A stretch of 64,000 nt of DNA, from IMG/VR virus record IMGVR_UViG_3300032116_014939, positions 178,065 to 242,064 of that record; one strand, 5' to 3'. A model generated the notes under the pieces. The model ran no database searches. It was not told the origin of the DNA and saw only the letters and a list, made by a program, of their open reading frames with translations. The position numbers and the translations under genes are program-made. Of this stretch, positions 1,460 through 63,476 are shown in pieces. How positions within the stretch are numbered: the stretch's first letter is position 1; the number at the start of each line of letters is the position of its first letter.

Positions 1460-2266
1460 ATGGAAAATATTTTAGATTTAAGTGTTATATTACCTATTAA
1501 AAGTATGGTAATGAGAGATTTTGAGGATTTCTTTAAAAAATCAATTGAGTCTGTACAATCTCAAGAGTTCTTACCAAAAAACTTAATTATAGTTCATGGT
1601 AAAGATAAAAATTTATCGGATTATTTGAAAAAATATGATTTTCAAAATCTTAAAGTAACAACTTTTGAATTTGATGGAGAACCAAATTTTTCAAATCAGG
1701 TTAATTTTGGAATTACAAAAGCTGAAACTAAATGGGTTAGTATTCTAGAAGTTGACGATGAATACTCAAAAATTTGGTTTAAAAATGTAAAAAAATATTT
1801 AGATTCATATTCTGATGTTGACGCATTTTTACCTATCGTAGTTGAGGTAGATAATAAATTAACCTTCCAAGGATTTACAAACGAAGCTACATTTGCGGCT
1901 AATTTCTCACAAGAAATGGGATATCTAACAAATGAAACTTTATTACAATATCAAAATTTTCAAACATCAGGAATGGTATTCAAAAAATCTCTAATTGAAG
2001 ATTTTGGTGGATTTAAACCAAGCATTAAATTAACATTTGTTTATGAATTGTTACTTCGTTTAACGTACAATTCGGCTAAAATTATGACTATTCCTAAAAT
2101 TGGTTACAAACACACTAATTTAAGAGAAGGTTCTATTTTTTGGGAATACAAAAATGGTGAAACCAAACTTGAAGAAAATGAGGTTAAGTTTTGGGTATCT
2201 TCAGCTAAAAAAGAATATTTTTTTAGTGAAGACAGAAACATAAAATTTGTTCCTGAAAATGCTTAA
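1460..2266 (+). CDS. glycosyltransferase family 2 (GT-A)
   Basis: 'LSVILPI' first strand, 'NFGITKAETKWVSILEVDD' DxD-like motif; ATG at 1460 preferred over TTG at 1445. Confidence 0.8.
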   Translation: MENILDLSVILPIKSMVMRDFEDFFKKSIESVQSQEFLPKNLIIVHGKDKNLSDYLKKYDFQNLKVTTFEFDGEPNFSNQVNFGITKAETKWVSILEVDDEYSKIWFKNVKKYLDSYSDVDAFLPIVVEVDNKLTFQGFTNEATFAANFSQEMGYLTNETLLQYQNFQTSGMVFKKSLIEDFGGFKPSIKLTFVYELLLRLTYNSAKIMTIPKIGYKHTNLREGSIFWEYKNGETKLEENEVKFWVSSAKKEYFFSEDRNIKFVPENA

Positions 2267-3003
2267 TGATATTAAGCGCCAGCTCAATAGAAATTGCCGT
2301 TAAGACGAAAAAAAAATCTAGCGGTGAAAATTACTTTGACATAAGAGAAGAGAATGCGGTCAGAATGTTTCTGACTGCTTCTACTTTTGAAGAAAAAAAT
2401 AAGATTTATAATGAATATTTAAGACATCCTTTAGATAAAATGATTTCTTCAATTATTCGTAGATATAAATTATACAGAAAAGATATGGATTTTATTGAAA
2501 TTCATACTGATACACATTCATTTTTGATGACAAAAATTGACAAATTTAGTCCATCAAAAGAAAAGAAAGCTTATTCATATTTTGGAACTATTTGCAAGAA
2601 TTATCTTATGGGTCAAATATTAAAAGACCAAAAAGAACAAAATAGAAAAATTTCCTATGAAGATATATCAGGTGATTTAGAAAATTCTCCTGAAATGGTT
2701 TATTACTTAGATGTTGAACCATCTGAAGAAGTTAATTTAATACCAATATTAATTGATTATATTAAAGAAACTATTGAAATTGATGATTTAAACGAAAGTG
2801 AAATAAAATTAGGTATTTCATTAGTTGAGATTATGGAAAATTATGAGACAATTTTTCCAGCAACTGATAACAATAAATTTAATAAAAATATTATTTTATT
2901 ATCGCTCAGAGAGATGACAAATATGTCAACAAAAGAAATAAGAGCGTCAATGAAAAAGTTCAAAAAAATATATACTGCTCTACTCCAAGTTAATCCTGAA
3001 TAA
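2266..3003 (+). CDS. phage sigma factor, T4 gp55-like (late transcription)
   Basis: Sigma region-2-like 'KIDKFSPSKEKKAYSYFGTICKNYL' (compare gp55-type FDPEKxxNxFAYFTxI) and a C-terminal helical segment. Confidence 0.72.
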   Translation: MILSASSIEIAVKTKKKSSGENYFDIREENAVRMFLTASTFEEKNKIYNEYLRHPLDKMISSIIRRYKLYRKDMDFIEIHTDTHSFLMTKIDKFSPSKEKKAYSYFGTICKNYLMGQILKDQKEQNRKISYEDISGDLENSPEMVYYLDVEPSEEVNLIPILIDYIKETIEIDDLNESEIKLGISLVEIMENYETIFPATDNNKFNKNIILLSLREMTNMSTKEIRASMKKFKKIYTALLQVNPE

Positions 3004-3030
3004 AAAATGTCATAAAAAATATTTATAAGT

Positions 3031-3393
3031 ATGACAAAACCAAAAAAGAAACAAATAAATTTTACACAGGACTCAATTTTAGCTCTGATGCAGGAAATTT
3101 ATAATGAGTTAGTTGAACAACGCTCCACCGCAATTAGAATTCAAAATAAAATGATTTCTATGATGAAAGAGCCTGAAGACATGACTGTTATAGGCCCGGT
3201 TATTGAAAAACAACAAAAAATCATAAATGATTGTGTTGAGAAAAAACTTACGTTATCTAAGTTACAATCAGGTATATGGGAAAAAAGAAGTAATTCCGAA
3301 GAAACTTTTGATATTTCATCTATGGATGATGATATTCTACAGGGTCTAATTTCAAAGGATATAAATTCAGATATTGAAAAATTTAATCTGTAA
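3031..3393 (+). CDS. hypothetical protein
   Basis: 120-aa ORF; TATTTAT at 3020-3026 just upstream. Confidence 0.75.
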   Translation: MTKPKKKQINFTQDSILALMQEIYNELVEQRSTAIRIQNKMISMMKEPEDMTVIGPVIEKQQKIINDCVEKKLTLSKLQSGIWEKRSNSEETFDISSMDDDILQGLISKDINSDIEKFNL

Positions 3394-5315
3394 TGGCAGA
3401 GGATATCAGACAAGGTTTTAAAGAAAGTAAAGCAAGGGCTAAAGCCGTCAAAACTTTTACGCAAGTACAAAAGGATTATGAAGGGTTTATACAGAACAAT
3501 ACTGATAGATTACAAAAAAAAGCGGAAAACATTCAAATAAATTTAGATTCCGCAACAATTTCAAGAAAAATTAAAGAAAAAACAAGTAATTCGTTTGAAG
3601 AATTAATTGATTTAATTGGTCAAACAAATACTAACCCAAATAATGATTTTTTTATTAATATTTTAAAAAATCAATTACAGAATTTACCAACTTTAATTGA
3701 AGGTATTATCGAAGAGTGTGTTTTTAGCTCATTGAATTGTTCTAATGAACAAACTTATTTAACAAATCAAGAACTATATATTCAAGTAAGTGAAATTGAT
3801 TTATTTAATCAACTTAAATTAAGTCCTGATAGTTCCATTGGTGCTTCAATATATGAAAAAATACCGTATGACCCATTAGCATCAAGAAGAAGTACTAACA
3901 GGTTTTTATACGAATTAATTCAAACACCATCAGTTCCGCAAGTTTACTACGGTTCATCAGGTCAAGAATTATTTAAAATTTCTTTTGAAACTTTTAACGG
4001 AGTTACTCAGGGGAATTATTTTAAAGTAGTTTTATACCAAAGAATAAATGCTCCAAATAGAGTAACAGATTTTATTATTGATTATTATAAAACTCTAAAA
4101 ATGTTAGATTTTAATAATGCGATAAATAAAATAGTTGATTTAATTTTAAACATAACAAAATTTAATTCAAATACCGGACCTTCAAAATATAATGATTGGT
4201 TAAAATTCACTAGAATACTTGAAAGAATTTTAGGAATGTGTTTTGATTCTAACCAAGAGATTGATGTTGGGGGTATTGCAAAATATCCTGAATATGATGA
4301 TGTTACTGACACATTTTTTGAATTTACACCAAATGAAATTTCTCAAATTGAGAACGAAATTTCTATCATAAGACAGGGTTATGTTGAATTTATTGATTGT
4401 AATAATGTTCAATTACCAATTAGTGATGTTGATTATGTTTTTGACACTATAAGTGAAGTCAATGAAGATGGAAGTAATATTAATACAATATTTCAAGATA
4501 TCTATTTTAATTTATCTAATGATGATAGATGGCAATTACAAGGTATTTCTCTTGATTACGCTTGGAATCAAGGAATAATTAAAAACTTTGTTAAAGGTGC
4601 AATGATGTCAATTTTATCACCAAAAGTCCTATTACCTTTTGTGGTTATGTCTAAAGCACTTTCAACCACTGTTTCCAATTTAGATGAAAACATTGTAAAC
4701 GATTTAGAAGCAAGTTCACCAGGAATGATGCAGTTTGCAAAATTGAACAGAAAAATGATAATCTGTGCTACCTCAAAAATAGGTGCGTTATTTATTGAAG
4801 CATTATATGAACAATTCAAACAGGATATTCTTAAATTAGTTAAATCAATATTAAGAGATTTGATTGTGACTAAAACAAAAATGCAAAAAAATGCAATTCA
4901 ATCAATTTTAGATAATACAGAGGCAATTATTAGAGGAGTAGTTAGTTTAGTTAATGACTATCGAAGTTGTAAATCACTACTTAATGCAATTTTTAATCTA
5001 TTAAAATTAACTCCAATACCTAGAAAATATATTTTACCAACACCATTTTTATATTTAACTGAATATCTATCTGGAGTTTTACCTCAAAAAGAAGTTGTTG
5101 AATACATTTTACAAATGCAACAACTTGGGATACCAACAGGCCCGGGTATTAATGGTGAGCCTGACTTAGGAACCCTTGAGAAAATTGCGGTCTTTACAGC
5201 ATCTTTTAATGAAAGGACTAAAAATGGTAAAATTGAAGGTGTTATAGTTACTGAAACAATTTCACCTACAGGTCAACCAACAGGAAATGTAAGAGTAACA
5301 GGAAAATATTTTTAA
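3393..5315 (+). CDS. large hypothetical protein, probably virion/baseplate associated
   Basis: 640-aa ORF translationally coupled to its neighbours, upstream of a gp5-like gene. Confidence 0.6.
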   Translation: MAEDIRQGFKESKARAKAVKTFTQVQKDYEGFIQNNTDRLQKKAENIQINLDSATISRKIKEKTSNSFEELIDLIGQTNTNPNNDFFINILKNQLQNLPTLIEGIIEECVFSSLNCSNEQTYLTNQELYIQVSEIDLFNQLKLSPDSSIGASIYEKIPYDPLASRRSTNRFLYELIQTPSVPQVYYGSSGQELFKISFETFNGVTQGNYFKVVLYQRINAPNRVTDFIIDYYKTLKMLDFNNAINKIVDLILNITKFNSNTGPSKYNDWLKFTRILERILGMCFDSNQEIDVGGIAKYPEYDDVTDTFFEFTPNEISQIENEISIIRQGYVEFIDCNNVQLPISDVDYVFDTISEVNEDGSNINTIFQDIYFNLSNDDRWQLQGISLDYAWNQGIIKNFVKGAMMSILSPKVLLPFVVMSKALSTTVSNLDENIVNDLEASSPGMMQFAKLNRKMIICATSKIGALFIEALYEQFKQDILKLVKSILRDLIVTKTKMQKNAIQSILDNTEAIIRGVVSLVNDYRSCKSLLNAIFNLLKLTPIPRKYILPTPFLYLTEYLSGVLPQKEVVEYILQMQQLGIPTGPGINGEPDLGTLEKIAVFTASFNERTKNGKIEGVIVTETISPTGQPTGNVRVTGKYF

Positions 5316-5316
5316 T

Positions 5317-7081: not shown

Positions 7082-7101
7082 TATTTATCTAAAAAGAGTA
7101 A

Positions 7102-8607
7102 ATGTCAATACATCGTTCATATTTTAGTAGGAACAATACAATAATTTCAAATAGTTTTACCAACACTGGTAAATCACCTTATACGCAATTATATTTTGGT
7201 TCAGCATCTGATGTAATTGCGTCCCCTGGATTTAGTAGATTTATCTTTGATTTAGATTTATCATTACTTGTACAAAAAATCCAAGACGGAATAATATCAA
7301 CAGGATGTACAGGTTTTTCAGGTATCACTCATACATTAAAAATGACCAACACATCTTCTTTTGATAAAGATGGGTTAAGTAATGAATACACATCACAAGG
7401 AAGATTAAGAGCAACATCATTTGACTTAGTTTTATTTAGAATACCTCTTACTTCAGGTAATACAGGAACTGCTCAAACGTGGGATGAAGGTGTTGGATAT
7501 GATTACTATGATGTTCAACGTACTTTAAATTCAACTAATGGTTTATTATCACCAATAGCTTTACCACAAGATAAAGCATATTCTCAAAGACCTTCTAATT
7601 GGTATCAAACAACAACATTAGATAATTGGTCAACACCCGGAATATACAATAATACAAACACAGGAACAGGGTCAACAATTAATTATTCGGCGTTAACAAT
7701 TGTTGATACTCAACATTTTGAATTTGGGAATGAAGATATTGAGTTTGATATGACAAATGAAATCAATCGAATTCTTACCGGTACAACAACTGGGTCAACA
7801 GGATGGGGAGTTGCTTTTTTACCCGAATTAGAAAATTTAACAGGTTTAACTGAAAACTATTCAGTAGGATTTTTTACAAGGCATACCCAAACTTTCTACG
7901 AACCATTTCTTGAAACAAATTATAACGATTTAATACTTGATAATCGAAACGCTTTTTATTCTTACAACAATAATAAATTATACTTGTATTCTTACATAGG
8001 TGGTGTACCAACAAATTTGGATAATTTACCGATTGTTACCTTAGAAAATAATCAAGGTAACACTATTGGTACTTATACGGGGTGTCAAATTACTCAAGGT
8101 GTTTATGAAATAACAACTAATTCTGTTTCAGCAACAACACCTTGTATGTTTACAGATACTTGGTCAAATCTTTATTATAACGGTATACAAATACCTAATG
8201 TAGTTAATGATTTAACTGTTTTACCATACACTGGTTATTTTACTCTTGGGCCTAATAGTCAAGACCCTGAACTTTTTGGTTTTGATTTTTACGGTATTAA
8301 ACAAGATGAAAAAATATTAAATACTGATTTAAGAAAAGTTGGTGTTGTTGTTAAAAAAGCGTACACATCTAATCAAGTATTAACACCTGTAACTGTTTAT
8401 TACCGAGTTTATGTTAAAGAGGGTCAAACAGAAGTACAAGTTCAAGATTGGACACAAGTAAACAGAGCGTCAAATGAATATTATTTCATCTTTGATACAA
8501 GAGATAAAATACCTAATGAATATTCAATAGATATTAAAGTACTTACATCAGGTGAAGTAGATACTTATAAGAAAACACTAACATTCCAAATAGTTGATAA
8601 GAAATGA
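7102..8607 (+). CDS. virion structural protein (Thr/Gly/Asn-rich, beta-rich)
   Basis: 501 aa with structural-protein composition; TATTTAT at 7082-7088. Confidence 0.55.
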   Translation: MSIHRSYFSRNNTIISNSFTNTGKSPYTQLYFGSASDVIASPGFSRFIFDLDLSLLVQKIQDGIISTGCTGFSGITHTLKMTNTSSFDKDGLSNEYTSQGRLRATSFDLVLFRIPLTSGNTGTAQTWDEGVGYDYYDVQRTLNSTNGLLSPIALPQDKAYSQRPSNWYQTTTLDNWSTPGIYNNTNTGTGSTINYSALTIVDTQHFEFGNEDIEFDMTNEINRILTGTTTGSTGWGVAFLPELENLTGLTENYSVGFFTRHTQTFYEPFLETNYNDLILDNRNAFYSYNNNKLYLYSYIGGVPTNLDNLPIVTLENNQGNTIGTYTGCQITQGVYEITTNSVSATTPCMFTDTWSNLYYNGIQIPNVVNDLTVLPYTGYFTLGPNSQDPELFGFDFYGIKQDEKILNTDLRKVGVVVKKAYTSNQVLTPVTVYYRVYVKEGQTEVQVQDWTQVNRASNEYYFIFDTRDKIPNEYSIDIKVLTSGEVDTYKKTLTFQIVDKK

Positions 8608-9637: not shown

Positions 9638-10042
9638 ATGACTATAATAAAAAAACTATGGGTTAAATATCGTCTATATCTACGTCGATTAGACCGAGAA
9701 AGTACCGAATTTGACATTTATATGTCTAACGTGAGGAAATGTTCCACCATATGTAGAAAACTCATTCATTCGGAGGATTCTGAACTCATAATCGCTCCAA
9801 TATCTGACAAAAAATATATCCGTAATGATAAATTAGGTATTTTTGTTACTATGGACGGTGGTCAAATAACTGTAACAAATCATACATACAGTTATTTTAT
9901 TAAATTAAGTAAAAGTCAATGGGATAAATTGGTTAATACATTCCGTAAAGAAATGGAACATAGAGCCATGGAGATTGAAAAAGAATTAGAAACTCAAATT
10001 AATCATTCTCTTGATAATATTTATAGTAAAATAAATCACTAA
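9638..10042 (+). CDS. hypothetical protein
   Basis: 134-aa ORF downstream of a host-type promoter. Confidence 0.75.
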   Translation: MTIIKKLWVKYRLYLRRLDRESTEFDIYMSNVRKCSTICRKLIHSEDSELIIAPISDKKYIRNDKLGIFVTMDGGQITVTNHTYSYFIKLSKSQWDKLVNTFRKEMEHRAMEIEKELETQINHSLDNIYSKINH

Positions 10043-11245: not shown

Positions 11246-11287
11246 ATGGATTTTTTTTTACTATCTTTAATATAAATATATCATGCT

Positions 11288-14890: not shown

Positions 14891-14960
14891 TGCGTAGTTA
14901 TTTTATTAAATAAATATATGAATGTTTATAAAAATTAATTTTTTTTTGTTAGAGCATAAA

Positions 14961-15947: not shown

Positions 15948-15970
15948 TTTACCTTTTTATTAGATAAATA

Positions 15971-16435: not shown

Positions 16436-16505
16436 TTACAATTTTTTCATATCTTCGTTTATTTATATATTAATAATAACACACAAAAATATAGTTGTCA
16501 AAAAA

Positions 16506-16691
16506 ATGTTAATTATCCCTGTCAGAAATAACGAGGTGGAAAAAGCTTTAAAAATGTTTAAACAAAAAGTAGTTAAAACTCAACTTGTAAAAAAATTACA
16601 GGAAGGAAAATACTACAAAAAAAAATCTGACACAAAACGTCAGATTTTAAAAAATGCAATTTATAAAAATTCAAAGAATACTGAATTATAA
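16506..16691 (+). CDS. rpsU: 30S ribosomal protein bS21 (phage-encoded)
   Basis: MLIIPVRNNEVEKALKMFKQKVVKTQLVKKLQEGKYYKKKSDTKRQILKNAIY... matches Bacteroidota bS21; true start is ATG 16506, not the track's 16407. Confidence 0.92.
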   Translation: MLIIPVRNNEVEKALKMFKQKVVKTQLVKKLQEGKYYKKKSDTKRQILKNAIYKNSKNTEL

Positions 16692-17396: not shown

Positions 17397-17420
17397 TTTA
17401 TAATAATTTAATTATAAATA

Positions 17421-21175: not shown

Positions 21176-21207
21176 ATACTATAAATATAAAATTTATCTT
21201 AAAATAG

Positions 21208-25270: not shown

Positions 25271-25303
25271 AATATTATTTTTTCTTTATAAATATAAGGA
25301 AAA

Positions 25304-26065: not shown

Positions 26066-26085
26066 AAATAATAAATATCTGTAAA

Positions 26086-30425: not shown

Positions 30426-30446
30426 TAAACTTTTTTTTAATAAATA

Positions 30447-31806: not shown

Positions 31807-31820
31807 ATATTTATAAATAT
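31807..31820. promoter_or_regulatory. palindromic double TATTTAT motif between divergent genes
   Basis: ATATTTATAAATAT is a perfect 14-bp palindrome between starts at 31794 (-) and 31822 (+). Confidence 0.65.
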
Positions 31821-33203: not shown

Positions 33204-33254
33204 TTTTTCTTTCTTTAAAATTTATGTAACTGATTTATAAATAGTTTAAAAAAT

Positions 33255-37634: not shown

Positions 37635-37679
37635 AATCTTTTTATTTATAAATATACTTTTATTTAAAAAAACAATATA

Positions 37680-39963: not shown

Positions 39964-40004
39964 TATTACATAAATATAACTCTACCAATAAAAAAGTGGA
40001 TAAT

Positions 40005-40803: not shown

Positions 40804-40867
40804 ATATAATTGTTTTCTAAATAAATATACGGTTGATTGAATAATATTAATTTATTATATTTTACAC

Positions 40868-42209: not shown

Positions 42210-42224
42210 ATATTTATAAATATA
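42209..42224. promoter_or_regulatory. palindromic double TATTTAT motif filling a 15-bp divergent intergenic gap
   Basis: TATATTTATAAATATA is a perfect 16-bp palindrome between starts at 42209 (-) and 42225 (+). Confidence 0.65.
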
Positions 42225-43905: not shown

Positions 43906-43962
43906 TATCCATTAACGTGGGTTTAAAGTTTATGAACAGAGTTCGTTTTATTTATAAATATA

Positions 43963-45901: not shown

Positions 45902-45970
45902 AAAAAAACTTTTTATATAAATAGATGAAATTTTAAAAAAAAGTATACTTATTGCTAAATAAATGAAATA

Positions 45971-47634: not shown

Positions 47635-47675
47635 CTTAACAATAAATATCTTATATTTCTTTTGTATATATAATT

Positions 47676-48302: not shown

Positions 48303-48313
48303 TATTTATTATT

Positions 48314-49326: not shown

Positions 49327-49344
49327 ATACTATAAATATAAGGG

Positions 49345-51132: not shown

Positions 51133-51168
51133 ACTGATAAATACTTTTTAATAAATATTTTGTTAATG

Positions 51169-51294: not shown

Positions 51295-51329
51295 GCCCTT
51301 TTAATAAATAAAATAAAAAAAAACAAAAA

Positions 51330-53441: not shown

Positions 53442-53525
53442 AAAAAATTCTTTTTTATCTATATAAATACAAAGAAAATTAACTTTTACACTTTTTTATA
53501 TCAAAAAAAAATAATATAATTGTAC

Positions 53526-55062: not shown

Positions 55063-55114
55063 ATATTATAAATACAAATGAAAATAAAAAACCCCACTTG
55101 TGGTGGGGTTTTGA

Positions 55115-55573
55115 TTACTTCAAGTTAGTATTGTCTTCGACAAAATTATCCACTTTATCTTTAAAAATCATATATGCCAAAGTTTGAACTCCAATAGCAG
55201 TTAAAAACTTTGGTATGTCTTTTTTAAATTCATTAGCTTGTTGTTTTAAACTTCTTTTTACTTTTTTAAGTAATTTTTTTAACCATTTAGGATTGGTTTG
55301 TTTCAATTCCAAAAAGTAAGCTTTAACTTCATCTTTATCTTTACCAACTAAAGAATTAATTGCGTTATCAATATTATCTTCAGGAGCGGTTTCCATCTTA
55401 GCTTCAAAACTTTTTTTATCAAGAGTTGATTCTGTAATATATGGTTTAACATCACCTGATTTTGTTTCAATCAATTTTTTAAAATTTTCAATAACAATTT
55501 TTTTACCACCTTCGTGTTGTTCACGAATTGAGTTTTTTACTTCTTCCGATAAATCGTTTAATAAATGTTTCAT
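55115..55573 (-). CDS. leader-bearing hypothetical protein
   Basis: 'MKHLLNDLSEEVKNSIREQH...YITES' resembles the N-terminus of the 40342-40803 protein. Confidence 0.7.
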   Translation of the reverse strand: MKHLLNDLSEEVKNSIREQHEGGKKIVIENFKKLIETKSGDVKPYITESTLDKKSFEAKMETAPEDNIDNAINSLVGKDKDEVKAYFLELKQTNPKWLKKLLKKVKRSLKQQANEFKKDIPKFLTAIGVQTLAYMIFKDKVDNFVEDNTNLK

Positions 55574-55594
55574 AGTTTTTTATTTATAAATATA

Positions 55595-56299: not shown

Positions 56300-56302
56300 G
56301 TA

Positions 56303-56812
56303 TTATATTTCGTATTCGTCAGGAATTATTCTATCAACGTCTTCTTCTGTTGTATTAATCAATTGGTTCATATCTCTCCAATTAATACCATTGATTGATA
56401 ATATATGCACCATCGTCATACCTGAATTAAGTTTTTTATCACTCAATAATGCCCATTCATCCGCAGTATCATCTTCATACATTTTTAAATAATTGTACAA
56501 TATTGATATATCATTTTCATCGGTGACTTCTGGTATTATCACATCAACATAAACGTCATACATTTCTCCAAAGTAGTCGTCCGCCTCTTCAACATCTGTA
56601 ATTTGAACAGGAAGTCGGTACCTTTTAGACAAATCGTCAAGATAGAACTCAATACTACCCCCTAACTTTGAATCAACCAATGCTTTTAGATATGGATATT
56701 GGGAAACTTTTTGAATGAATTGTTCTAACCCACCAAAAAACTTGGAGATTTCCATAACAGAAACCCCTTTATCAATTAAACCAATTACTTTTTGTGAAAA
56801 ATTATCAGACAT
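56303..56812 (-). CDS. hypothetical acidic protein
   Basis: ATG at 56812; TATTTAT upstream. Confidence 0.7.
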   Translation of the reverse strand: MSDNFSQKVIGLIDKGVSVMEISKFFGGLEQFIQKVSQYPYLKALVDSKLGGSIEFYLDDLSKRYRLPVQITDVEEADDYFGEMYDVYVDVIIPEVTDENDISILYNYLKMYEDDTADEWALLSDKKLNSGMTMVHILSINGINWRDMNQLINTTEEDVDRIIPDEYEI

Positions 56813-56876
56813 ATAAGATAAATACATTATAAAACAAAAAACCCCACTCAGATGAATGGGGGTTTAAAAATTACTC

Positions 56877-57410: not shown

Positions 57411-57719
57411 CTAAAACTGCATGTTAATTCTCTTAATCTCTATTCCAAACTTATCCGTATAATATTTCTCAATACCTTCACCTACCGAATTTCCAAATAA
57501 AACACGCATCTTTTCAAAAAAAGAATAATCAATCCATAATGTTCCATTAAGATTTCTGTGGGCAATTCTTACAGGGTGACCATCACTATCAATATCTTTC
57601 CTACTAAAGAAATGAATATACCCATCCTCATCAACAGCCATTTCAACATCACCATAGGTGGCGTCCATGTACTTCTTAATAACCTCATTTAACTTACTCT
57701 CGGTGATAATATATTTCAT
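57411..57719 (-). CDS. MKYIITES-leader protein
   Basis: 102-aa ORF. Confidence 0.75.
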   Translation of the reverse strand: MKYIITESKLNEVIKKYMDATYGDVEMAVDEDGYIHFFSRKDIDSDGHPVRIAHRNLNGTLWIDYSFFEKMRVLFGNSVGEGIEKYYTDKFGIEIKRINMQF

Positions 57720-57735
57720 ATTACAATAAATACCT
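57699..57735 (-). repeat. 37-bp promoter+leader repeat, copy 1
   Basis: CTCGGTGATAATATATTTCATATTACAATAAATACCT, identical at 60291-60327. Confidence 0.92.
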
Positions 57736-58271
57736 CAAAGTAAAAAACGGTGGAAGTTGGATACCCGTAAAGGAAATATATTATTTCCCTTTGTTCGATT
57801 ATCATCTTTCCATAAAGGTCTCAAGTTTTTATAATAACATGATTTTTTAACCCATTCTTCAGATTTATACAAAGATACTGGAATAATATGGTCATATTCC
57901 CATTCACCACGATTACCCCAAGTCATACCTTCTAAAAATCTTGATTCAATATAAGGTATAAACAATTCAACGGAAATACCAAGATATTCGGACAAAAAAC
58001 TATTTTTTTTATAACCTCTTTTACTGTTAATACTTCTAACTAAAGACCTTAAACTCTGAGTTGTACCATGAATAGGATTTTCTTTTTCTCGTCTACGTTT
58101 TCTCTTAACATCATACGCATTCAACTCCTTATGATATTCAGGGTCATTCTTTCTACGTTCCATCTTTTGAATATACCTACGTTTGTTATCACATAGTTTA
58201 CACTTCTTTCGGTTATCTCTAAAATCGGAAACGGGCTTACTAATATTACAACAATTACAAATACGTTCCAT
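57735..58271 (-). CDS. HNH homing endonuclease-like protein
   Basis: N-terminal CxxC pair; 'GMTWGNRGEWEYDHIIPVS...NLRPLWKDDNRTKGN'. Confidence 0.85.
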   Translation of the reverse strand: MERICNCCNISKPVSDFRDNRKKCKLCDNKRRYIQKMERRKNDPEYHKELNAYDVKRKRRREKENPIHGTTQSLRSLVRSINSKRGYKKNSFLSEYLGISVELFIPYIESRFLEGMTWGNRGEWEYDHIIPVSLYKSEEWVKKSCYYKNLRPLWKDDNRTKGNNIFPLRVSNFHRFLL

Positions 58272-58276
58272 ATTTT

Positions 58277-59116
58277 TTATACTCCTCTCATTTCTTTTAA
58301 AAATTTATTATATCTATCAATATTTGATTCGTTAATTTTATTTGATTTACTAGCATTTTCATCTTTCCACAAAGGTTGCAGATTAGTGTGATGATTTAAA
58401 TATATTTTTTCTTCAAATGTATTTCCACAACTAATGGGAACAATATGGTCAAAACACCATTCACTACGATTGTCCCATGACATACCCTCCTTGAATAAAC
58501 TTTCAAAATACTTTAATCCGCTACTATAATCAATTCCAAGAATTTCTTCAGGAGAAAATTTACTTCTATATTCAGGGAATCCTGATAAAGAATATGAAAG
58601 TATTGAACCAATACTTTGTTTATATTTAAACAGTGGCGCTTTATCGTAATCCAATTTATCACTTTTACACCTGTTAGCAATAGTAAAAAGAGGTCGGATA
58701 TTAGTATAATGAGAGTTTTTTTCATAACTCTCTTGATTTTCAGATTTACTTAAAGGAAATATATGGTCAACTTCCCAATCACCATAATTATCCCACGACA
58801 TACCATCAACAAATTGTTTCTCCAAATGTTCTTTTAACATAATGGCATCACATCCAATAATATCTTCGTAAGTTTTTCCTTCAGGTTTAGAATAACCACG
58901 TCTTTTAAATTCATTTTTTAGTCGAGATTTTAATGACAATAAAATTTTATAATGTATTTCAAGTGACTTTCGGTTCTTTCTAATCTCAACCCTAGATTTT
59001 TTAGCACATTCTTTACATTTAGAAGACACTTTATTTTTAGCAAAATAATATTCTGACCTAGGTTTGCTTTCCTTACATACATAACAAACTTTTAATTCAT
59101 CCAATCTATGACCCAT
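58277..59116 (-). CDS. HNH homing endonuclease-like protein with two HNH domains
   Basis: 'GMSWDNYGDWEVDHIFPLS...NIRPLFTIANRCKSD' and 'GMSWDNRSEWCFDHIVPIS...NLQPLWKDENASKSN'. Confidence 0.85.
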   Translation of the reverse strand: MGHRLDELKVCYVCKESKPRSEYYFAKNKVSSKCKECAKKSRVEIRKNRKSLEIHYKILLSLKSRLKNEFKRRGYSKPEGKTYEDIIGCDAIMLKEHLEKQFVDGMSWDNYGDWEVDHIFPLSKSENQESYEKNSHYTNIRPLFTIANRCKSDKLDYDKAPLFKYKQSIGSILSYSLSGFPEYRSKFSPEEILGIDYSSGLKYFESLFKEGMSWDNRSEWCFDHIVPISCGNTFEEKIYLNHHTNLQPLWKDENASKSNKINESNIDRYNKFLKEMRGV

Positions 59117-59168
59117 AAACCAAATATAACGAAAAATGGGGTATTGGAAATGTGAGAAATAAAAAAAA

Positions 59169-59552
59169 TTATATTTCTTTTATAAATTGACCAACACCTA
59201 CACTACGAAAACCTTTACTTCTTAATTTGTTTTTAACTCTAACCGCATCTTCTCTTTCAAAACCAGCATCGGCAAAATCTAAAGGTGCCCCCACATCAAC
59301 TATAACGTATCTACTAGTAATACCAAATTTAACACAATCAGTATCAATATATTGTCTTAAATAATTACGGATTTCGTCATAAAAATTATTAGATATGGTT
59401 TTATTATTAGAATCAACGTCATCATTAGGTGTTGGGTTATTTTTGGGGACAATACGTTTGGCTGGACGTTTTTTTTCAGCTTCTGATAATTTAACAACCC
59501 TTTTAATCAATCTTGTTAAATCAGATTCAGTTAATCTTACAATTTTTTTCAT
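59169..59552 (-). CDS. leader-bearing protein (paralog of 59558-59929)
   Basis: MKKIVRLTESDL leader; shared 'DVGAPLDF.D.GF...K.KLR..GF.S.GVGQ' domain. Confidence 0.8.
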   Translation of the reverse strand: MKKIVRLTESDLTRLIKRVVKLSEAEKKRPAKRIVPKNNPTPNDDVDSNNKTISNNFYDEIRNYLRQYIDTDCVKFGITSRYVIVDVGAPLDFADAGFEREDAVRVKNKLRSKGFRSVGVGQFIKEI

Positions 59553-59557
59553 ATTAA

Positions 59558-59929
59558 TTAAAATTCGCTTGTTCTAACTTTTTTCGCATATTGACCTACA
59601 CCCCAACTATTAAAACCATGTTTTCTTAATTTATCTTTAGCTTTGTTTGCCTCACTTCTTGAAAATCCACAATCTTCAAAATCTAATGGAGCCCCAACAT
59701 CAAATACCAAATAATCTGCTAAATACTTATATGTAATACAACCCGCTTTAAGATACGGTTCCATAGCGTTAAACACCGGTTGTGTTTCAATATCTTTATC
59801 TGATGGTTTAGAATTAAATCCACTATAAAATGTGTCTTTTATCTTATCTTCCCAACTATCATTTTCTTTGATGACTTTCTTAACTATTTTAACCAAATCA
59901 GACTCGGTTAATCTTATAACTTTTTTCAT
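59558..59929 (-). CDS. leader-bearing protein (paralog of 59169-59552)
   Basis: MKKVIRLTESDLVKIVKKVIKEN leader; same C-terminal domain. Confidence 0.8.
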   Translation of the reverse strand: MKKVIRLTESDLVKIVKKVIKENDSWEDKIKDTFYSGFNSKPSDKDIETQPVFNAMEPYLKAGCITYKYLADYLVFDVGAPLDFEDCGFSRSEANKAKDKLRKHGFNSWGVGQYAKKVRTSEF

Positions 59930-59960
59930 AATAATATTTTATTATAAATACCACAAAATT

Positions 59961-59997
59961 AAAAAGGGGGTAGGGGGATTGGAACAACGGGAAAAAA
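59961..59997. repeat. G-rich intergenic repeat, copy 1
   Basis: AAAAAGGGGGTAGGGGGATTGGAACAACGGGAAAAAA. Confidence 0.9.
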
Positions 59998-59999
59998 TT

Positions 60000-60311
60000 T
60001 TATACAAAAATAACATCCCACACCGCAGTAGAATCTCCGTTTTTGTCTTTAGGAAATAATAATGTAAACATGGTTCCAATCTTTTCTTCAATATCTGAAC
60101 CCTCGTCATAAGCATGATAACTACGACCACCTGTATTTAGTATAATTTGATATACAGGATATGTCTCATTTCTAAATTTCCAATTTTTTGTTTTTATCTC
60201 AACATCACCATTAAACCATTCGTATTCAGATAATAAGTTCTCAACATAATCCTTTAAGAAATTAACTTTCCTCATTTGTAAATTCTGAGACTCGGTGATA
60301 ATATATTTCAT
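60000..60311 (-). CDS. MKYIITES-leader protein
   Basis: 103-aa ORF. Confidence 0.75.
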   Translation of the reverse strand: MKYIITESQNLQMRKVNFLKDYVENLLSEYEWFNGDVEIKTKNWKFRNETYPVYQIILNTGGRSYHAYDEGSDIEEKIGTMFTLLFPKDKNGDSTAVWDVIFV

Positions 60312-60327
60312 ATTACAATAAATACCT
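60291..60327 (-). repeat. 37-bp promoter+leader repeat, copy 2
   Basis: Identical to 57699-57735. Confidence 0.92.
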
Positions 60328-60383
60328 TAAAAATAAAAAACCCCTCACATCGGAGGGGTTGTATAATTTAATATTGTTTTACA

Positions 60384-60764
60384 TCACCAACGTTTGGGAT
60401 TAAACCATCCAAGATGTCTGCCGGTTTCCTTAAAGCTTTGACGATTATCATCATCTTCCTCATCTTCTTTACCAAGAAGAACATAATTCAAATCGTCAAG
60501 AACTGTATACTTATCAACCTCCTCATCATTAACATTCAAAAAAATATCACGTCCAAGATATTTCACCAACGGGGTACCTCCTTCAACATACTCATTGTAT
60601 AACTCAATAATACTCTGTGGTGAAGATGTTTCACCAACTTTATTTCTAACACCCTTAAATCCAGCAGATATGAAAATATCCTTTTCTTCATGTCTATTTT
60701 CCTTAACAACTCTTTTAACTATTTTAACCAAATCTGATTCAGTTAATGTTATAACTTTTTTCAT
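60384..60764 (-). CDS. leader-bearing protein
   Basis: MKKVITLTESDLVKIVKRVVKEN leader. Confidence 0.78.
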   Translation of the reverse strand: MKKVITLTESDLVKIVKRVVKENRHEEKDIFISAGFKGVRNKVGETSSPQSIIELYNEYVEGGTPLVKYLGRDIFLNVNDEEVDKYTVLDDLNYVLLGKEDEEDDDNRQSFKETGRHLGWFNPKRW

Positions 60765-60796
60765 ATTAATATTTTATAATAAATACACCCCAAAAC

Positions 60797-60837
60797 AAAA
60801 AAGGGGGTAGGGGGGAATTGGGACAACGGAAAAAAAA
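60797..60837. repeat. G-rich intergenic repeat, copy 2
   Basis: AAAAAAGGGGGTAGGGGGGAATTGGGACAACGGAAAAAAAA. Confidence 0.9.
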
Positions 60838-61140
60838 TTATTTTTTCTTGTCTGTACGTTTAACTTCAACGTTATTAATAAAAACCTTTGTCGGGGGATT
60901 ATTTCTTGTCGATTCAAAATATTCATCAAAGGCGGTCCAGAACATATTTGGTTCTAAATTATATGTATTTAACATTTCGTTACCATGTATTGACAATCGA
61001 CTAACATCTTCAGAGTTGTAATATCTTTTTATTCTTTCTTTAAGAGCATCCATCTTCTGTTTCGGATATGTTTGCTCCGCAATAACTCGTTTAATTATAC
61101 GAGTCAAATCTGATTCTGTAAGTCTAATTATCTTTTTCAT
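60838..61140 (-). CDS. leader-bearing protein
   Basis: MKKIIRLTESDLTRIIKRVIAEQ leader. Confidence 0.78.
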   Translation of the reverse strand: MKKIIRLTESDLTRIIKRVIAEQTYPKQKMDALKERIKRYYNSEDVSRLSIHGNEMLNTYNLEPNMFWTAFDEYFESTRNNPPTKVFINNVEVKRTDKKK

Positions 61141-61175
61141 ATGTAATAAATATAACAGAAATAAAAAAGGGGAAA

Positions 61176-61751
61176 TTAAGGTTTAACCAAATAGATTTTA
61201 TTTTCATCGTAATTCTTAACCAAGACAGTCTCTTGTTTAAATTCTTGAGCAAGTTCTTCAGCAACCTTATTTAATACGTCAGAAGTAATTCCAACGATTT
61301 CAACAGATAATGAACTCTCATCATACAACGAACCATCTTTGGCTTTATATCGACCCTTAACAAAATTTCCAATGGTCACACCAAATATTTCAGGGTTGTT
61401 TTTAATCACCTTATTTATTTTACTTGATTTAAACAAAATATTTGTTGCGGTTTCAAGTTTGTTTTTAATAAAACGAACCAACTTGTTTTTAGATAATTCA
61501 ACAGCATTAACATTAACAGAAAAAACAATTACCCCACCTTTATCTTCAAACTCAAAATCAATTTCTTCAGTAAGTTCAGATTCAACATTTGGTTGTATAT
61601 AAAATGTTTGAGCATCAGGGTCGTTGTCTATATTAATAGAAAACCCATTTAATTTTAATCCTTCCATTAAACTACTCGCACCAATCTGCTCGTAAGTCTT
61701 TTTTGACGAATCAAAGTTCTTAACTTTATCAATAAATTTTCTAATATCCAT
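61176..61751 (-). CDS. putative SAM lyase (T3 SAMase-like fold)
   Basis: 'KGRYK...DESSLSVEIV...VAEELAQEFKQETVLV' parallels T3 SAMase 'TGCYRE...EEKTVRV...VARLACNEWEQDCVLV' (alignment from memory). Confidence 0.5.
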   Translation of the reverse strand: MDIRKFIDKVKNFDSSKKTYEQIGASSLMEGLKLNGFSINIDNDPDAQTFYIQPNVESELTEEIDFEFEDKGGVIVFSVNVNAVELSKNKLVRFIKNKLETATNILFKSSKINKVIKNNPEIFGVTIGNFVKGRYKAKDGSLYDESSLSVEIVGITSDVLNKVAEELAQEFKQETVLVKNYDENKIYLVKP

Positions 61752-61792
61752 ATACTTGATTTTTAAATAAATATAAACTAAAGATACAAAAT

Positions 61793-61833
61793 AAAAAAGG
61801 GGGGTAGGGGGGATTGGAACAACGGAAAAAAAA
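61793..61833. repeat. G-rich intergenic repeat, copy 3
   Basis: AAAAAAGGGGGGTAGGGGGGATTGGAACAACGGAAAAAAAA. Confidence 0.9.
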
Positions 61834-61838
61834 TATTT

Positions 61839-62300
61839 TTATAATTTACCAACAAGTTCATCCAATCCCTCAATGATAATCCCACACTCAGAATAAAACT
61901 CGTAGTTACACTTACCCGTGTTCTTAGCTCTAAGAGTAACCAATGAATGTTCCTTGTCAGTCAAAGAAATGGTGGACGCATATTTCTTACATAATAAAAC
62001 AAAATCATCAACACCAATAGTAGGATTCTTACTTAACTCATCCATGATATATCCCATGGCAATCTTTCTCGGAACATAGTGGTCATGAACAATCTTACCA
62101 CCACCCTTAACTCCATTAGATGATAAACCCGTATGCCAAAACTTAGTGTTAGTTAAATCAAACAAAGGGTTGCGGTTCCTAGATAAAAACATATCATATA
62201 ATACATCATTATCCTTAACTTCCAAATACCTCGGAACAAGACAAAGAAAATCCTTCAATGTCTCCTCAACCTTAACCAATTGTTTATTTGTAAGTTTCAT
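61839..62300 (-). CDS. hypothetical protein
   Basis: 153 aa; 'VHDHYVPRK' may be a degenerate HNH-like motif; TATATTTG upstream. Confidence 0.7.
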   Translation of the reverse strand: MKLTNKQLVKVEETLKDFLCLVPRYLEVKDNDVLYDMFLSRNRNPLFDLTNTKFWHTGLSSNGVKGGGKIVHDHYVPRKIAMGYIMDELSKNPTIGVDDFVLLCKKYASTISLTDKEHSLVTLRAKNTGKCNYEFYSECGIIIEGLDELVGKL

Positions 62301-62825: not shown

Positions 62826-62874
62826 ATATATTTTTTTTACAAAGATAAAACAATAATACTAATTTACCAAAAAA

Positions 62875-63123
62875 TTATTTAACATCAGAAAATGAATCCA
62901 CATTAATAAACTCAGATTCCAAATGACCAATGATATCCCTAAGAGTCTGACCCTGTAACTCAGGGGTTTCCCTACTACGAATAGATAATGAAATAGCCCC
63001 ACACAATACAGATATAATATCATTAATATTCATACCCTTCTTGGCCATTATGTCATAAAAAAATTTATTGTCCCTTAATGTTACATCCACAGTAACTGAT
63101 AATTTTTCTTCTTCCATTTCCAT
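62875..63123 (-). CDS. hypothetical protein
   Basis: 82-aa ORF. Confidence 0.65.
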   Translation of the reverse strand: MEMEEEKLSVTVDVTLRDNKFFYDIMAKKGMNINDIISVLCGAISLSIRSRETPELQGQTLRDIIGHLESEFINVDSFSDVK

Positions 63124-63206
63124 ATATCAATAATAAGAAAAAAAATGAAATAAAAAACCCCTCCGTTAAAGGAAGGGTCAGTCCAACAATACTATCATTG
63201 GAGAGG

Positions 63207-63449
63207 TTAATAATCTTCAGTACCCATAAATGCTTCGTCCCCAATATCACCTATAGTATCAATAATATCAGTTAAAACTCTTACGACACCTTCCGTTCCG
63301 TATGTTTTATAAACAGGTTGTAAAATATCCATAATTTGGACATGTACTGACTCAGTATCATCATGAAATGAATCTTCATCTCTTTCTTCATTAATAACCC
63401 TTTTAATTATATTGGTTAATTCTTTTTCTGTTAATCTAATCTTTTTCAT
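63207..63449 (-). CDS. leader-bearing small acidic protein
   Basis: MKKIRLTEKELTNIIKRVINEE leader; ATG at 63449. Confidence 0.78.
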   Translation of the reverse strand: MKKIRLTEKELTNIIKRVINEERDEDSFHDDTESVHVQIMDILQPVYKTYGTEGVVRVLTDIIDTIGDIGDEAFMGTEDY

Positions 63450-63476
63450 AGTATATATTTTATATATAAATACCAA

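What the first reader, a model, noticed from the sequence alone, without database searches (positions are those of the whole stretch)
2266..63476. TATTTAT motif before most structural and leader genes: probable late promoter, inverted relative to T4
Seen: sense-strand TATTTAT lies about 4-25 nt upstream of more than 20 starts, for example 3020-3026, 7082-7088 and 48303-48309 on +, and 14910-14916, 15964-15970, 17414-17420, 21181-21187 and 51137-51143 on -. Established: the T4 gp55 promoter is TATAAATA on the sense strand; here the sense strand carries the reverse complement of ATAAATA. Inference: it is the target of the gp55-like sigma at 2266-3003. Gaps of only 4-5 nt to the ATG would make many late mRNAs leaderless or nearly so, which may relate to the phage carrying its own bS21. 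An RNA-level translation signal is an alternative reading.
Basis: partly seen in the sequence, partly recalled or inferred. Interest (0 to 1): 0.6.

Follow-up and report, generated by a model that had tools for sequence, protein, structure and literature searches.

The report
Phage late-type promoter motif TATTTAT
A strictly conserved seven-letter DNA word, TATTTAT, sits a fixed few bases before about a quarter of the genes of this 242-kb freshwater phage of Bacteroidetes. It is most likely the phage's own promoter, read by a phage sigma factor, and it would start many messages right at the start codon.

Summary
Sense-strand TATTTAT lies 4-21 nt before 32 starts in the window. Genome-wide it lies within 40 nt of 60 of 262 starts, against 10.1 +/- 2.9 in shuffled upstream DNA. 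It is the top upstream 7-mer, and none of its 21 one-mismatch variants is enriched.

The gap to the ATG is bimodal: 4-8 nt (peak 5) or 11-19 nt (peak 14), never 9-10. In the long class, positions 5-7 after the motif are A in 27-31 of 32 sites, which is where the A of ATG sits in the short class.

The motif follows terminator hairpins, fills a 15-nt divergent intergenic space, and is almost absent from operon-internal genes (1 of 99). It is conserved before terL in relatives with 70-85% identical TerL. It also precedes TerL, portal, tail sheath and tail fibre genes in a cultured Flavobacterium phage, whose early genes carry host-type promoters instead.

Best reading: a -10-like, -35-independent phage promoter giving leaderless or roughly 9-nt-leader mRNAs.

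ORF 2266-3003 is a divergent sigma. Its N-domain resembles T4 gp55, but it has an extra C-terminal domain.

"Inverted T4" is better put as the T4 octamer with its central AA changed to TT. No transcription start-site data exist.

The parts
2266..3003 (+). Divergent sigma-70-family protein (245 aa). N-domain is sigma region 2 / gp55-like; C-terminal 5-helix domain may be region-4-like. Candidate reader of TATTTAT.
   Evidence: PF04542 weak hit at window 2443-2610. Family profile against PDB: SigA region 2 at E 0.003, gp55 at E 0.19. AF2 pLDDT 89.5. VIA Z 10.8 to gp55 7d7c_F. C-domain Z no higher than 6, inconclusive. Docking on Flavobacterium beta' 272-346 scores 0.76 against control 0.00.
3020..3026 (+). 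TATTTAT, gap 4 to ATG of 3031-3393 (120 aa). First gene after the sigma gene.
   Evidence: The same position carries the motif or a variant in distant sigma homolog loci.
7082..7088 (+). TATTTAT, gap 13 to 7102-8607 (501 aa), with AAA at positions 5-7 after the motif.
   Evidence: The syntenic site in L091 carries CTATTTAA-N4-AAA.
10018..10024 (+). TATTTAT, gap 28 to 10053-10298. Lies in the 3' end of the upstream ORF. Uncertain member.
11272..11278 (-). TATTTAT, gap 26 to 10295-11245 (316 aa). Uncertain member.
14910..14916 (-). TATTTAT, gap 19 to 13472-14890 (472 aa). The major head protein gene 11590-13440 follows without a motif of its own.
   Evidence: Co-transcription of the MCP gene with its upstream gene is reported in PMC9723584.
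15964..15970 (-). TATTTAT, gap 16 to the prohead protease gene 15228-15947.
16460..16466 (+). TATTTAT, gap 39 to the bS21 gene. The motif is conserved in relatives while the spacer varies.
16506..16691 (+). Phage bS21 gene (61 aa).
   Evidence: PF01165, E 3.5e-10
17414..17420 (-). TATTTAT, gap 17 to 16686-17396. Lies directly after the portal gene's stop codon.
21181..21187 (-). TATTTAT, gap 5 to the terminase large subunit gene 19430-21175. Lies after a terminator hairpin.
   Evidence: Conserved in relatives with 70-100% identical TerL.
25288..25294 (-). TATTTAT, gap 17 to 25082-25270.
26071..26077 (-). TATTTAT, gap 5 to the GTG start of 25304-26065. The only non-ATG start in the short-gap class.
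30440..30446 (-). TATTTAT, gap 14 to 29346-30425.
31808..31819 (.). Palindrome TATTTATAAATA between divergent genes. + copy has gap 7 to 31822-32589; - copy has gap 18 to 30925-31794.
33237..33243 (-). TATTTAT, gap 33 to the GTG start of 32586-33203. Uncertain member.
37648..37654 (-). TATTTAT, gap 13 to 36156-37634.
39970..39976 (-). TATTTAT, gap 6 to 39703-39963 (86 aa).
40821..40827 (-). TATTTAT, gap 17 to 40342-40803.
42211..42222 (.). Palindrome TATTTATAAATA that nearly fills a 15-nt divergent intergenic space. + copy has gap 7 to 42225-42845; - copy has gap 6 to 41607-42209.
43954..43960 (-). TATTTAT, gap 41 to 43709-43912. Uncertain member.
45917..45923 (-). TATTTAT, gap 15 to 44564-45901.
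47642..47648 (-). TATTTAT, gap 7 to 47251-47634.
48303..48309 (+). TATTTAT, gap 4 to ATG 48314 (revised start of 48299-49012).
49332..49338 (-). TATTTAT, gap 5 to 49009-49326.
51137..51157 (-). Two TATTTAT copies (51137-51143 with gap 4, 51151-51157 with gap 18) before the endolysin-like gene 49345-51132.
53463..53469 (-). TATTTAT, gap 21 to 52866-53441.
55068..55074 (-). TATTTAT, gap 5 to 54715-55062. Lies 13 nt after the terminator hairpin 55112-55088.
55586..55592 (-). TATTTAT, gap 12 to 55115-55573.
56818..56824 (-). TATTTAT, gap 5 to ATG 56812 (revised start of 56303-56827). Lies after the terminator 56861-56842.
57726..57732 (-). TATTTAT, gap 6 to 57411-57719.
59944..59950 (-). TATTTAT, gap 14 to 59558-59929.
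60318..60324 (-). TATTTAT, gap 6 to 60000-60311. Lies after the terminator 60360-60339.
60779..60785 (-). TATTTAT, gap 14 to 60384-60764.
61146..61152 (-). TATTTAT, gap 5 to 60838-61140.
61767..61773 (-). TATTTAT, gap 15 to 61176-61751.
63466..63472 (-). TATTTAT, gap 16 to ATG 63449 (revised start of 63207-63476).

Best explanation
TATTTAT is the -10-like core of a phage-specific promoter class. Its extended form is TATTTAT-N4-AAA, often TATTTATA. It probably serves late or middle-to-late genes.

The proposed mechanism:
- Host core RNA polymerase carrying a phage sigma melts the heptamer. The favoured sigma is the gp55-like protein at 2266-3003.
- Transcription starts at an A lying 5-7 nt downstream. 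No -35 element is needed.
- Where the ATG lies 4-8 nt after the motif, the mRNA is leaderless or nearly so (about 45% of sites).
- Where the ATG lies 11-19 nt after the motif, the mRNA has an A-rich leader of roughly 6-14 nt, typically about 9.

Shown by computation: the enrichment, the strictness of the heptamer, the spacing, the conservation and the genomic context of the motif; the sigma fold; and the predicted docking on beta'.

Inferred: that the motif is a promoter, where transcription starts, when it acts, and which sigma reads it.
For: 1. Enrichment and strictness.
- 60 of 262 genes carry the motif, against 10.1 +/- 2.9 in shuffles.
- It is the top upstream 7-mer.
- 33% of all copies of the exact word lie in the sense -35..-1 windows, against 0-7% for each of the 21 one-mismatch variants.
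- 37% of copies open an ORF, against 2-5% for permutations.

2. Geometry.
- Gaps are bimodal, 4-8 and 11-19 nt, with none at 9-10.
- In the long class, positions 5, 6 and 7 after the motif are A in 30, 27 and 31 of 32 sites. In the short class the A of ATG occupies the same positions. So a feature is anchored to the motif, not to the start codon, as a transcription start would be.
- With the host geometry (sigma-A box at -12 to -5 in F. psychrophilum; PMC9723704), +1 falls on the A of ATG for the modal gap of 5.

3. Context.
- Only 1 of 99 operon-internal genes carries the motif, against about 40% of genes with at least 10 nt of upstream spacer.
- 10 of 66 sites sit within 60 nt downstream of the T-run of a terminator-like hairpin, 9 of them within 13 nt, leaving no room for another promoter.
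- A 15-nt divergent intergenic space holds two overlapping copies.
- No -35-like conservation is seen.

4. Conservation.
- Before terL in relatives with 70-85% identical TerL, the heptamer is invariant while its flanks diverge.
- The gap switches between 4-5 and 10-16 nt with the same protein N-terminus.
- The motif is absent where terL abuts an upstream ORF.
- It is the top or a near-top 7-mer in many divergent loci.

5. Independent cultured phage.
- In Flavobacterium phage vB_FspM_immuto_3-5A the motif precedes annotated TerL, portal, tail sheath, tail fibre and baseplate-module genes.
- Its runs of small early ORFs and its primase gene carry host-type TTG...TAnnTTTA boxes instead.

6. Sigma.
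- The gene directly after the sigma gene carries the motif here, in immuto, and in loci whose sigma is 28-33% identical, either exactly or as CTATTTAA/C plus AAA.
- The immuto phage gave no hit to the second phage sigma, of sigma-70 type.

7. Published RNA profiles of this phage group report MCP co-transcribed with its upstream gene, and the protease co-transcribed with its downstream gene (PMC9723584). This matches where motifs are present and absent.
Against: - There is no transcription start-site or expression data for this genome. All 20 public runs holding it are DNA.
- A DnaB-like helicase gene carries a full motif, so 'late' may be too narrow.
- Several structural genes, such as portal and MCP, lack a motif of their own and must be co-transcribed with upstream genes.
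- The sigma has no hit above threshold in Pfam or PHROGs, Foldseek E-values are weak, and helical folds give middling Z scores easily.
- The docking pass may reflect the model's memory of solved sigma-RNAP complexes.
- No gp45-type clamp C-domain was found. The contig is only about 82% complete.
Confidence: 0.75

Rival explanations
1. The motif acts at the RNA level, as UAUUUAU: a translation enhancer or standby site for Shine-Dalgarno-independent Bacteroidetes ribosomes, possibly tuned by phage bS21. The real promoters would lie further upstream.
For: - The motif lies very close to start codons.
- Bacteroidetes do not use Shine-Dalgarno pairing (PMC9976891 abstract; PMC9723704).
- The phage encodes bS21.
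Against: - 98 of 99 operon-internal genes are translated without the motif.
- Relatives whose terL abuts an upstream ORF lack it.
- The distance to the ATG is bimodal, and the conserved AAA is anchored to the motif rather than to the ATG.
- Sites directly after terminators, and the 15-nt divergent spacer, leave no room for another promoter.
- The bS21-less immuto phage uses the motif too.
Confidence: 0.08
2. The motif is a promoter, but it is read by a different factor: the second phage sigma (266 aa, regions 1.2+2+4, G000 51244-52044), host sigma-A redirected by a phage protein, or a DNA-binding activator. ORF 2266-3003 would do something else.
For: - The second sigma has strong Pfam hits.
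- TATTTAT shares T-12, A-11, T-8 and T-6 with the host TAnnTTTG box.
- Identification of ORF 2266-3003 as a sigma rests on weak scores.
Against: - The immuto phage keeps the motif and an ORF 2266-3003 homolog, but gave no hit to the 266-aa sigma.
- The order 'sigma gene, then motif, then next gene' is conserved down to 25-33% sigma identity.
- A sigma with region 4 would be expected to need a -35 element, and none is conserved.
- Host-type boxes form a separate class before other genes.
Confidence: 0.14
3. The motif is an RNA processing site. An endoribonuclease would cut AU-rich UAUUUAU in long transcripts, creating the short-leader 5' ends.
For: The motif is AU-rich, intergenic and strand-specific.
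Against: - The sites after terminators and in the 15-nt divergent spacer have no upstream transcript to process.
- The heptamer is far stricter than known AU-rich RNase sites (the comparison with RNases is from general knowledge).
- The motif is absent inside tight operons, where processing would be most useful.
Confidence: 0.03

Closest known systems
Phage T4 late promoters (TATAAATA) read by gp55 with gp33 and the gp45 clamp
   Same: - A single strictly conserved A/T-only box at the -10 position, with no -35 element and an A/T-rich stretch downstream (PMC2988020).
- Dozens of copies before structural genes of a phage with T4-like head genes (gp20/gp21/gp23-type).
- A phage sigma whose region-2 domain resembles gp55.
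- As an octamer, TATTTATA matches TATAAATA at 6 of 8 positions in the same orientation.
   Different: - The central AA is TT. The T4 word itself is not enriched except inside palindromes (12 sense upstream copies of 73).
- The sigma has 245 aa and an extra C-terminal helical domain, where gp55 has a clamp-binding tail (PMC7892883).
- No gp45-type clamp C-domain was detected.
- About 45% of sites sit so close to the ATG that the mRNAs would be leaderless.
Bacteroidetes sigma-A promoters (-33 TTTG / -7 TAnnTTTG)
   Same: - The box lies at about -12 to -5 and begins with TA (PMC9723704).
- The same host RNA polymerase core is presumably used; no phage RNAP beta subunit was found.
   Different: - A replaces T at the sixth position, there is no terminal G, and there is no -33 element.
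- Host-type boxes occur before a different set of genes here and in the immuto phage.
bS21-encoding freshwater Bacteroidetes phages (Chen et al. 2022, PMC9723584)
   Same: - The window has the described layout: bS21 on the strand opposite to TerL, portal, protease and MCP.
- The habitat is freshwater or lake.
- The reported co-transcribed gene pairs match the motif map.
   Different: That paper mentions no promoter, motif, sigma factor, UTR or leaderless mRNA.
Leaderless mRNAs (common in Deinococcus, mycobacteria and archaea)
   Same: The predicted +1 coincides with the A of ATG. 22 of 23 short-gap genes start with ATG. Leaders of a few nucleotides are avoided, since there are no gaps of 9-10 nt.
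   Different: In the likely host family only 5.5% of mRNAs are leaderless (PMC9723704). Here the share among motif-driven genes would be about 45%. This has not been measured.

Membership tests
T4-type late promoter | Single -10-like A/T box without a conserved -35 element | tested here: met
   The position matrix of 66 sites has no column above 0.83 bits upstream of the heptamer. Terminator hairpins of arbitrary sequence occupy the -35 region at some sites.
T4-type late promoter | Box sequence TATAAATA | tested here: not met
   The box is TATTTAT(A). TATAAATA has 12 sense upstream copies of 73 in the genome, all within palindromes. 6 of 8 positions are shared with the T4 box.
T4-type late promoter | Box about one helical turn upstream of the mapped transcription start | not testable with these tools
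   No RNA run holds the sequence. Indirect support only: a conserved A lies 5-7 nt downstream.
T4-type late promoter | Drives late (virion and lysis) genes | tested here: inconclusive
   The motif precedes TerL, the protease gene, the gene upstream of MCP and an endolysin-like gene here, and TerL, portal, sheath and fibre genes in immuto. It also precedes a DnaB-like helicase gene. No timing data exist.
T4-type late promoter | Dependence on a sliding clamp (gp45) and gp33 | tested here: inconclusive
   PF09116 gave no hit in the roughly 82%-complete contig. gp33 was not searched for.
gp55 family (T4 late sigma) | Sigma region-2 homology domain that binds the beta' clamp helices | tested here: met
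   Profile against PDB: SigA region 2 at E 0.003, gp55 at E 0.19. VIA Z 10.8, rmsd 5.4, 118 aligned residues to 7d7c_F. Predicted interface with F. johnsoniae beta' 272-346 scores 0.76 against a best control of 0.00; the mark was reached by 58 of 80 solved complexes and 2 of 110 mismatched pairs; contact agreement at least 63%; partner pLDDT at least 70. The pass may reflect likeness to solved complexes.
gp55 family (T4 late sigma) | About 185 aa, no second globular domain, C-terminal clamp-binding motif | tested here: not met
   The protein has 245 aa with a confident extra helical domain at residues 153-245 (pLDDT 92.5).
Sigma-70 family | Region 4 helix-turn-helix domain | tested here: inconclusive
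   The C-domain matches several region-4 structures at Z 5.0-5.4, but the best row (Z 6.0) is unrelated and all lie below the noise level for helical folds. The sequence profile found nothing.
Sigma-70 family | Pfam Sigma70_r2 above the curated cut-off | tested here: not met
   13.2 bits against a cut-off of 24. No Pfam hit in hmmscan.
Bacteroidetes sigma-A promoter | TAnnTTTG at -7 plus TTTG at -33 | tested here: not met
   The heptamer has A at the sixth position, and the TATTTGT and TATTTTT variants are not enriched. No upstream TTG is conserved.
Leaderless mRNA | Primary 5' end at the A of the start codon | not testable with these tools
   Geometric inference only.

The most novel reading that the evidence does not exclude
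A large, widespread group of Bacteroidetes phages uses a dedicated two-domain gp55-like sigma and a TATTTAT box to make late mRNAs that are leaderless or carry about 9-nt A-rich leaders. The sigma family has thousands of members in freshwater and marine metagenomes, and one member is in a cultured Flavobacterium phage. In the bS21-encoding members, the phage bS21 would retune host ribosomes to favour exactly these 5' ends. Phage control of transcription start and of translation start would then be two halves of one late-gene switch.
Probability: 0.2. Interest if true: 0.85.

Novelty: new variant of a known kind. Interest (0 to 1): 0.62.

Why it matters
- The motif gives a sequence rule, TATTTAT-N4-A, that marks transcription-unit starts in a very common but almost unstudied group of freshwater and marine Bacteroidetes phages. 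This improves gene-start and operon annotation. Four starts in this window were corrected by it.
- It identifies a large sigma family that current Pfam and PHROG models miss.
- It shows how the T4 late-promoter logic has drifted in another host phylum.
- It predicts an unusually high share of leaderless late mRNAs in a phylum where these are rare.
- That prediction turns the open question of what phage-encoded bS21 does into a concrete experiment with defined mRNA 5' ends.
- A cultured phage-host pair that carries the motif and the sigma already exists.

Tried and rejected
- **Megablast.** 25 kb of the window against GenBank phages gave no match.
- **Family scans of the sigma ORF.** PHROGs and Pfam gave nothing above threshold. 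Single-sequence phmmer against the PDB gave nothing.
- **The search for related loci with the sigma alignment.** It failed because there was no conserved 7-10-column stretch. It was replaced by three exact look-ups of distant homologs.
No RNAP beta domain is present in the contig.
- **E. coli-type sigma-70 promoters.** They are not enriched: 85 against 95.6 in shuffles.
- **T4 word TATAAATA as the true sense motif.** Rejected. It occurs upstream only as part of TATTTATAAATA palindromes, and it would place the start inside the coding region.
- **C-terminal domain of the sigma as region 4 or gp33-like.** Fold search was inconclusive, Z no higher than 6, and the sequence profile found nothing.
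- **Link between bS21 and the share of short gaps.** There were only two data points: 30 of 66 sites here, and 4 of 18 in the bS21-less immuto phage. That is too few to say anything.

Full report
**Setting**

- The window is the last 64 kb of a 242,064-bp IMG/VR viral contig. GC content is 32%, estimated completeness is 82%, and no close relative exists in GenBank phages.
- The window carries T4-like head genes on the minus strand:
  - major head protein, 11590-13440
  - prohead protease, 15228-15947
  - portal, 17421-19268
  - terminase large subunit, 19430-21175
- A bS21 gene lies on the opposite strand at 16506-16691 (PF01165, E 3.5e-10).
- This is the layout described for freshwater bS21 phages of Bacteroidetes (PMC9723584). 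The same DNA is present in 20 public freshwater or lake DNA runs, and in no RNA run.

The total count in the window is close to chance: 59 copies against 47.5 +/- 7.0. The signal is one of position.

- With a crude longest-ORF gene call (89 genes in the window, 263 in the contig), TATTTAT is the most enriched 7-mer in the 50 nt before starts.
- 60 of 262 genes carry it in sense within 40 nt. Dinucleotide shuffles of those same windows give 10.1 +/- 2.9. The antisense word is only mildly raised, at 23 against 14.8 +/- 3.5.
- A test that needs no gene calls gives the same answer. 66 of the 177 copies are followed within 4-21 nt by a first ATG opening an ORF of at least 50 aa (37%). Same-composition words that do not overlap the motif give 2-5%, and the reverse complement gives 6%.
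- In the window, 37 copies precede an ORF in sense, 32 of them at 4-21 nt.

**Anatomy of the motif**

- The heptamer is strict. A third of all copies of the exact word lie in the sense upstream windows, against 0-7% for each of the 21 one-mismatch variants.
- No -35-like conservation lies upstream.
- The gap to the start codon is bimodal: 4-8 nt (peak 5) and 11-19 nt (peak 14). No site has a gap of 9-10 nt.
- In the long-gap class, the 5th, 6th and 7th bases after the motif are A in 30, 27 and 31 of 32 sites. In the short-gap class the A of ATG occupies those positions, and 22 of 23 starts are ATG.
- So a conserved purine is anchored to the motif rather than to the start codon. This is what a transcription start would look like.
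- In the likely host family the sigma-A box spans -12 to -5 (PMC9723704). With that geometry, +1 falls on the A of ATG for the modal gap of 5, and on the central A of the AAA otherwise.

**Genomic context**

- Only 1 of 99 genes that abut a same-strand upstream gene carries the motif. About 40% of genes with at least 10 nt of spacer do.
- Ten of 66 sites lie within 60 nt downstream of the T-run of a terminator-like hairpin, nine of them within 13 nt.
- At 42210-42224, a 15-nt divergent spacer is almost filled by the palindrome TATTTATAAATA. It gives a sense copy 6-7 nt before each ATG.
- E. coli-type promoters are not enriched. Host-type Bacteroidetes boxes (TAnnTTTG) stand before a different set of genes, including the Lon-like protease gene at 26419.
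- No phage RNA polymerase beta domain was found.

**Conservation in relatives**

Eighty related loci were fetched through TerL.

- Wherever terL follows a terminator, the heptamer is invariant while its flanks diverge.
- The gap is either 4-5 or 10-16 nt, with the same protein N-terminus. This fixes the start codon and shows that the two spacing classes interchange.
- Where terL abuts an upstream ORF, the motif is absent. The motif is therefore not needed for translation of terL.
- It is the top or a near-top upstream 7-mer in many loci with only 70-75% TerL identity.
- It is conserved before bS21 while the 39-nt spacer varies.

**An independent, cultured phage**

The distant cultured Flavobacterium phage vB_FspM_immuto_3-5A has GenBank annotation made independently of this analysis.

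- The motif precedes its TerL, portal, tail sheath, tail fibre and baseplate-module genes.
- Its runs of small early ORFs and its primase gene carry TTG...TATATTTAG-type host boxes instead.
- 18 of 65 copies open ORFs, against 0-11% for permutations.

**The sigma**

- ORF 2266-3003 has no Pfam or PHROG hit above threshold. It belongs to a very large family:
  - nearly 8,000 close relatives in the word search, one of them named a sigma factor by UniRef
  - 1,098 representative clusters in the exhaustive search
- A profile of 59 members hits only sigma factors at the top of the PDB list. SigA region 2 scores E 0.003 across the hallmark region 2.2-2.4 block, and T4 gp55 scores E 0.19.
- The AlphaFold model is confident, with pLDDT 89.5.
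  - All top Foldseek rows are sigma factors, but the E-values are weak.
  - In the VIA re-alignment, gp55 ranks second, with Z 10.8, rmsd 5.4 and 118 residues aligned.
- The extra C-terminal domain (residues 153-245, pLDDT 92.5) recurrently matches sigma region 4 at Z 5.0-5.4. That is within the noise level.
- Co-folding with the first 420 residues of F. johnsoniae beta' scored 0.76, against a best control of 0.00.
  - The pass mark was reached by 58 of 80 solved complexes and by 2 of 110 mismatched pairs.
  - Contacts agree in at least 63% of cases, and the partner's pLDDT is at least 70.
  - Sigma residues 41-92 and 125-135 sit on beta' residues 272-346, the clamp-helix region.
  - The pass may reflect likeness to solved complexes rather than showing that this copy binds.
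- The sigma gene ends a 20-kb stretch without motifs. It is followed directly by the first TATTTAT.
- The same order is seen in immuto at 25% sigma identity, and in loci at 28-33% identity. One clade shows the variant CTATTTAA/C plus AAA at syntenic sites.
- A second, conventional phage sigma with regions 1.2, 2 and 4 lies at G000 51244-52044. It gave no hit in immuto.

**Comparison with T4**

- T4 late promoters are a single 8-bp TATA box about one helical turn upstream of the start, with no other conserved element (PMC2988020).
- The motif here shares that logic. The sigma shares the gp55-type region-2 domain.
- Written as an octamer, TATTTATA differs from TATAAATA only at the two central positions in the same orientation. 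'Inverted' is therefore a coincidence of a near-palindrome, not a mechanism.
- Differences from T4:
  - the box sequence
  - the two-domain sigma
  - no gp45-type clamp domain detected
  - a predicted leaderless share of about 45%, against 5.5% of host mRNAs in F. psychrophilum

**Limits**

- No start-site or timing data exist for this genome.
- A DnaB-like helicase gene carries a full motif, while the DNA polymerase, SbcC-like and glycosyltransferase genes do not. 'Late' is therefore a label by analogy.
- Most target genes have unknown function.
- The bS21 link is speculative. The bS21-less immuto phage uses the same motif.
- The literature searches found no report of this motif as a phage promoter. 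The bS21-phage paper mentions no promoter, motif or sigma.

**Verdict**

It is best read as a phage-specific, -35-independent promoter class that is a variant of the T4 late type. It is probably read by the sigma at 2266-3003, and it probably yields many leaderless mRNAs. It is a new variant of a known kind, of moderate to good interest, and directly testable in a cultured phage-host pair.

Noticed in passing
window 59125-59178, 59952-60005, 60791-60844, 61787-61840; related G-rich runs at 63612-63677: A repeated intergenic element of about 40-54 nt, G-rich on the + strand (a run of A, then GGGGGTAGGGGGG, AATTGGRACAACGG, then a run of A). Read on the - strand, it lies just upstream of TATTTAT sites of small - strand genes. 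It is not a hairpin and its function is unknown.
   Followed up: partly
window 57411-61751 and 63207-63449 (- strand): Families of paralogous small genes. Five copies share a 68-nt 5' segment, and 57411-57719 and 60000-60311 share 92% identical starts. Each has its own TATTTAT and often its own terminator. No family hit rose above threshold (weak DUF1064 and SAM-lyase-like hits only).
   Followed up: partly
G000:C1:51244-52044 (- strand), outside the window: A second phage-encoded sigma factor of the conventional sigma-70 type, with regions 1.2, 2 and 4 well above the Pfam cut-offs. Its promoter class and timing are unknown.
   Followed up: partly
window 9638, 26419, 44020 (+); 52350, 59116, 62300, 62825 (- starts): Host-type Bacteroidetes -7 boxes (TAnnTTTG or close) stand before genes that lack TATTTAT, including the Lon-like ATP-dependent protease gene 26419-28482. 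They probably form the early, host sigma-A class. TAnnTTTG was counted (14 sense copies in the 35 nt before starts, 394 copies genome-wide on both strands) but was not tested against shuffles.
   Followed up: partly
window 16436-16505: In the spacer between the divergent bS21 gene and its partner gene 15971-16435, two blocks are conserved among relatives: ATCTTCGTT plus TATTTAT on one side, and GTTGTCAAAAAA directly before the bS21 ATG. The middle of the spacer varies freely. On the other strand the second block reads TTTTTTGACAAC and could belong to the partner gene's promoter.
   Followed up: partly
L091 (JGI 3300017917 contig), positions 10783-10808 and 14824-14846: In a clade whose sigma is about 33% identical, the syntenic promoter positions carry CTATTTAC or CTATTTAA followed by N4-AAA instead of TATTTAT. 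This hints that box and sigma co-vary.
   Followed up: partly
G000:C1:160793-181067 (window up to 3003): A block of about 20 kb of tightly packed + strand genes has no TATTTAT. It includes a glycosyltransferase gene (window 1445-2266) and ends with the sigma gene. It looks like a separately regulated sugar-modification operon.
   Followed up: no
window 17421-19268 (portal) and 11590-13440 (MCP): Neither gene has an exact motif. The portal gene has the one-mismatch word CATTTAT 32 nt upstream, inside a 161-nt spacer. The MCP gene follows its upstream gene after 31 nt.
   Followed up: no
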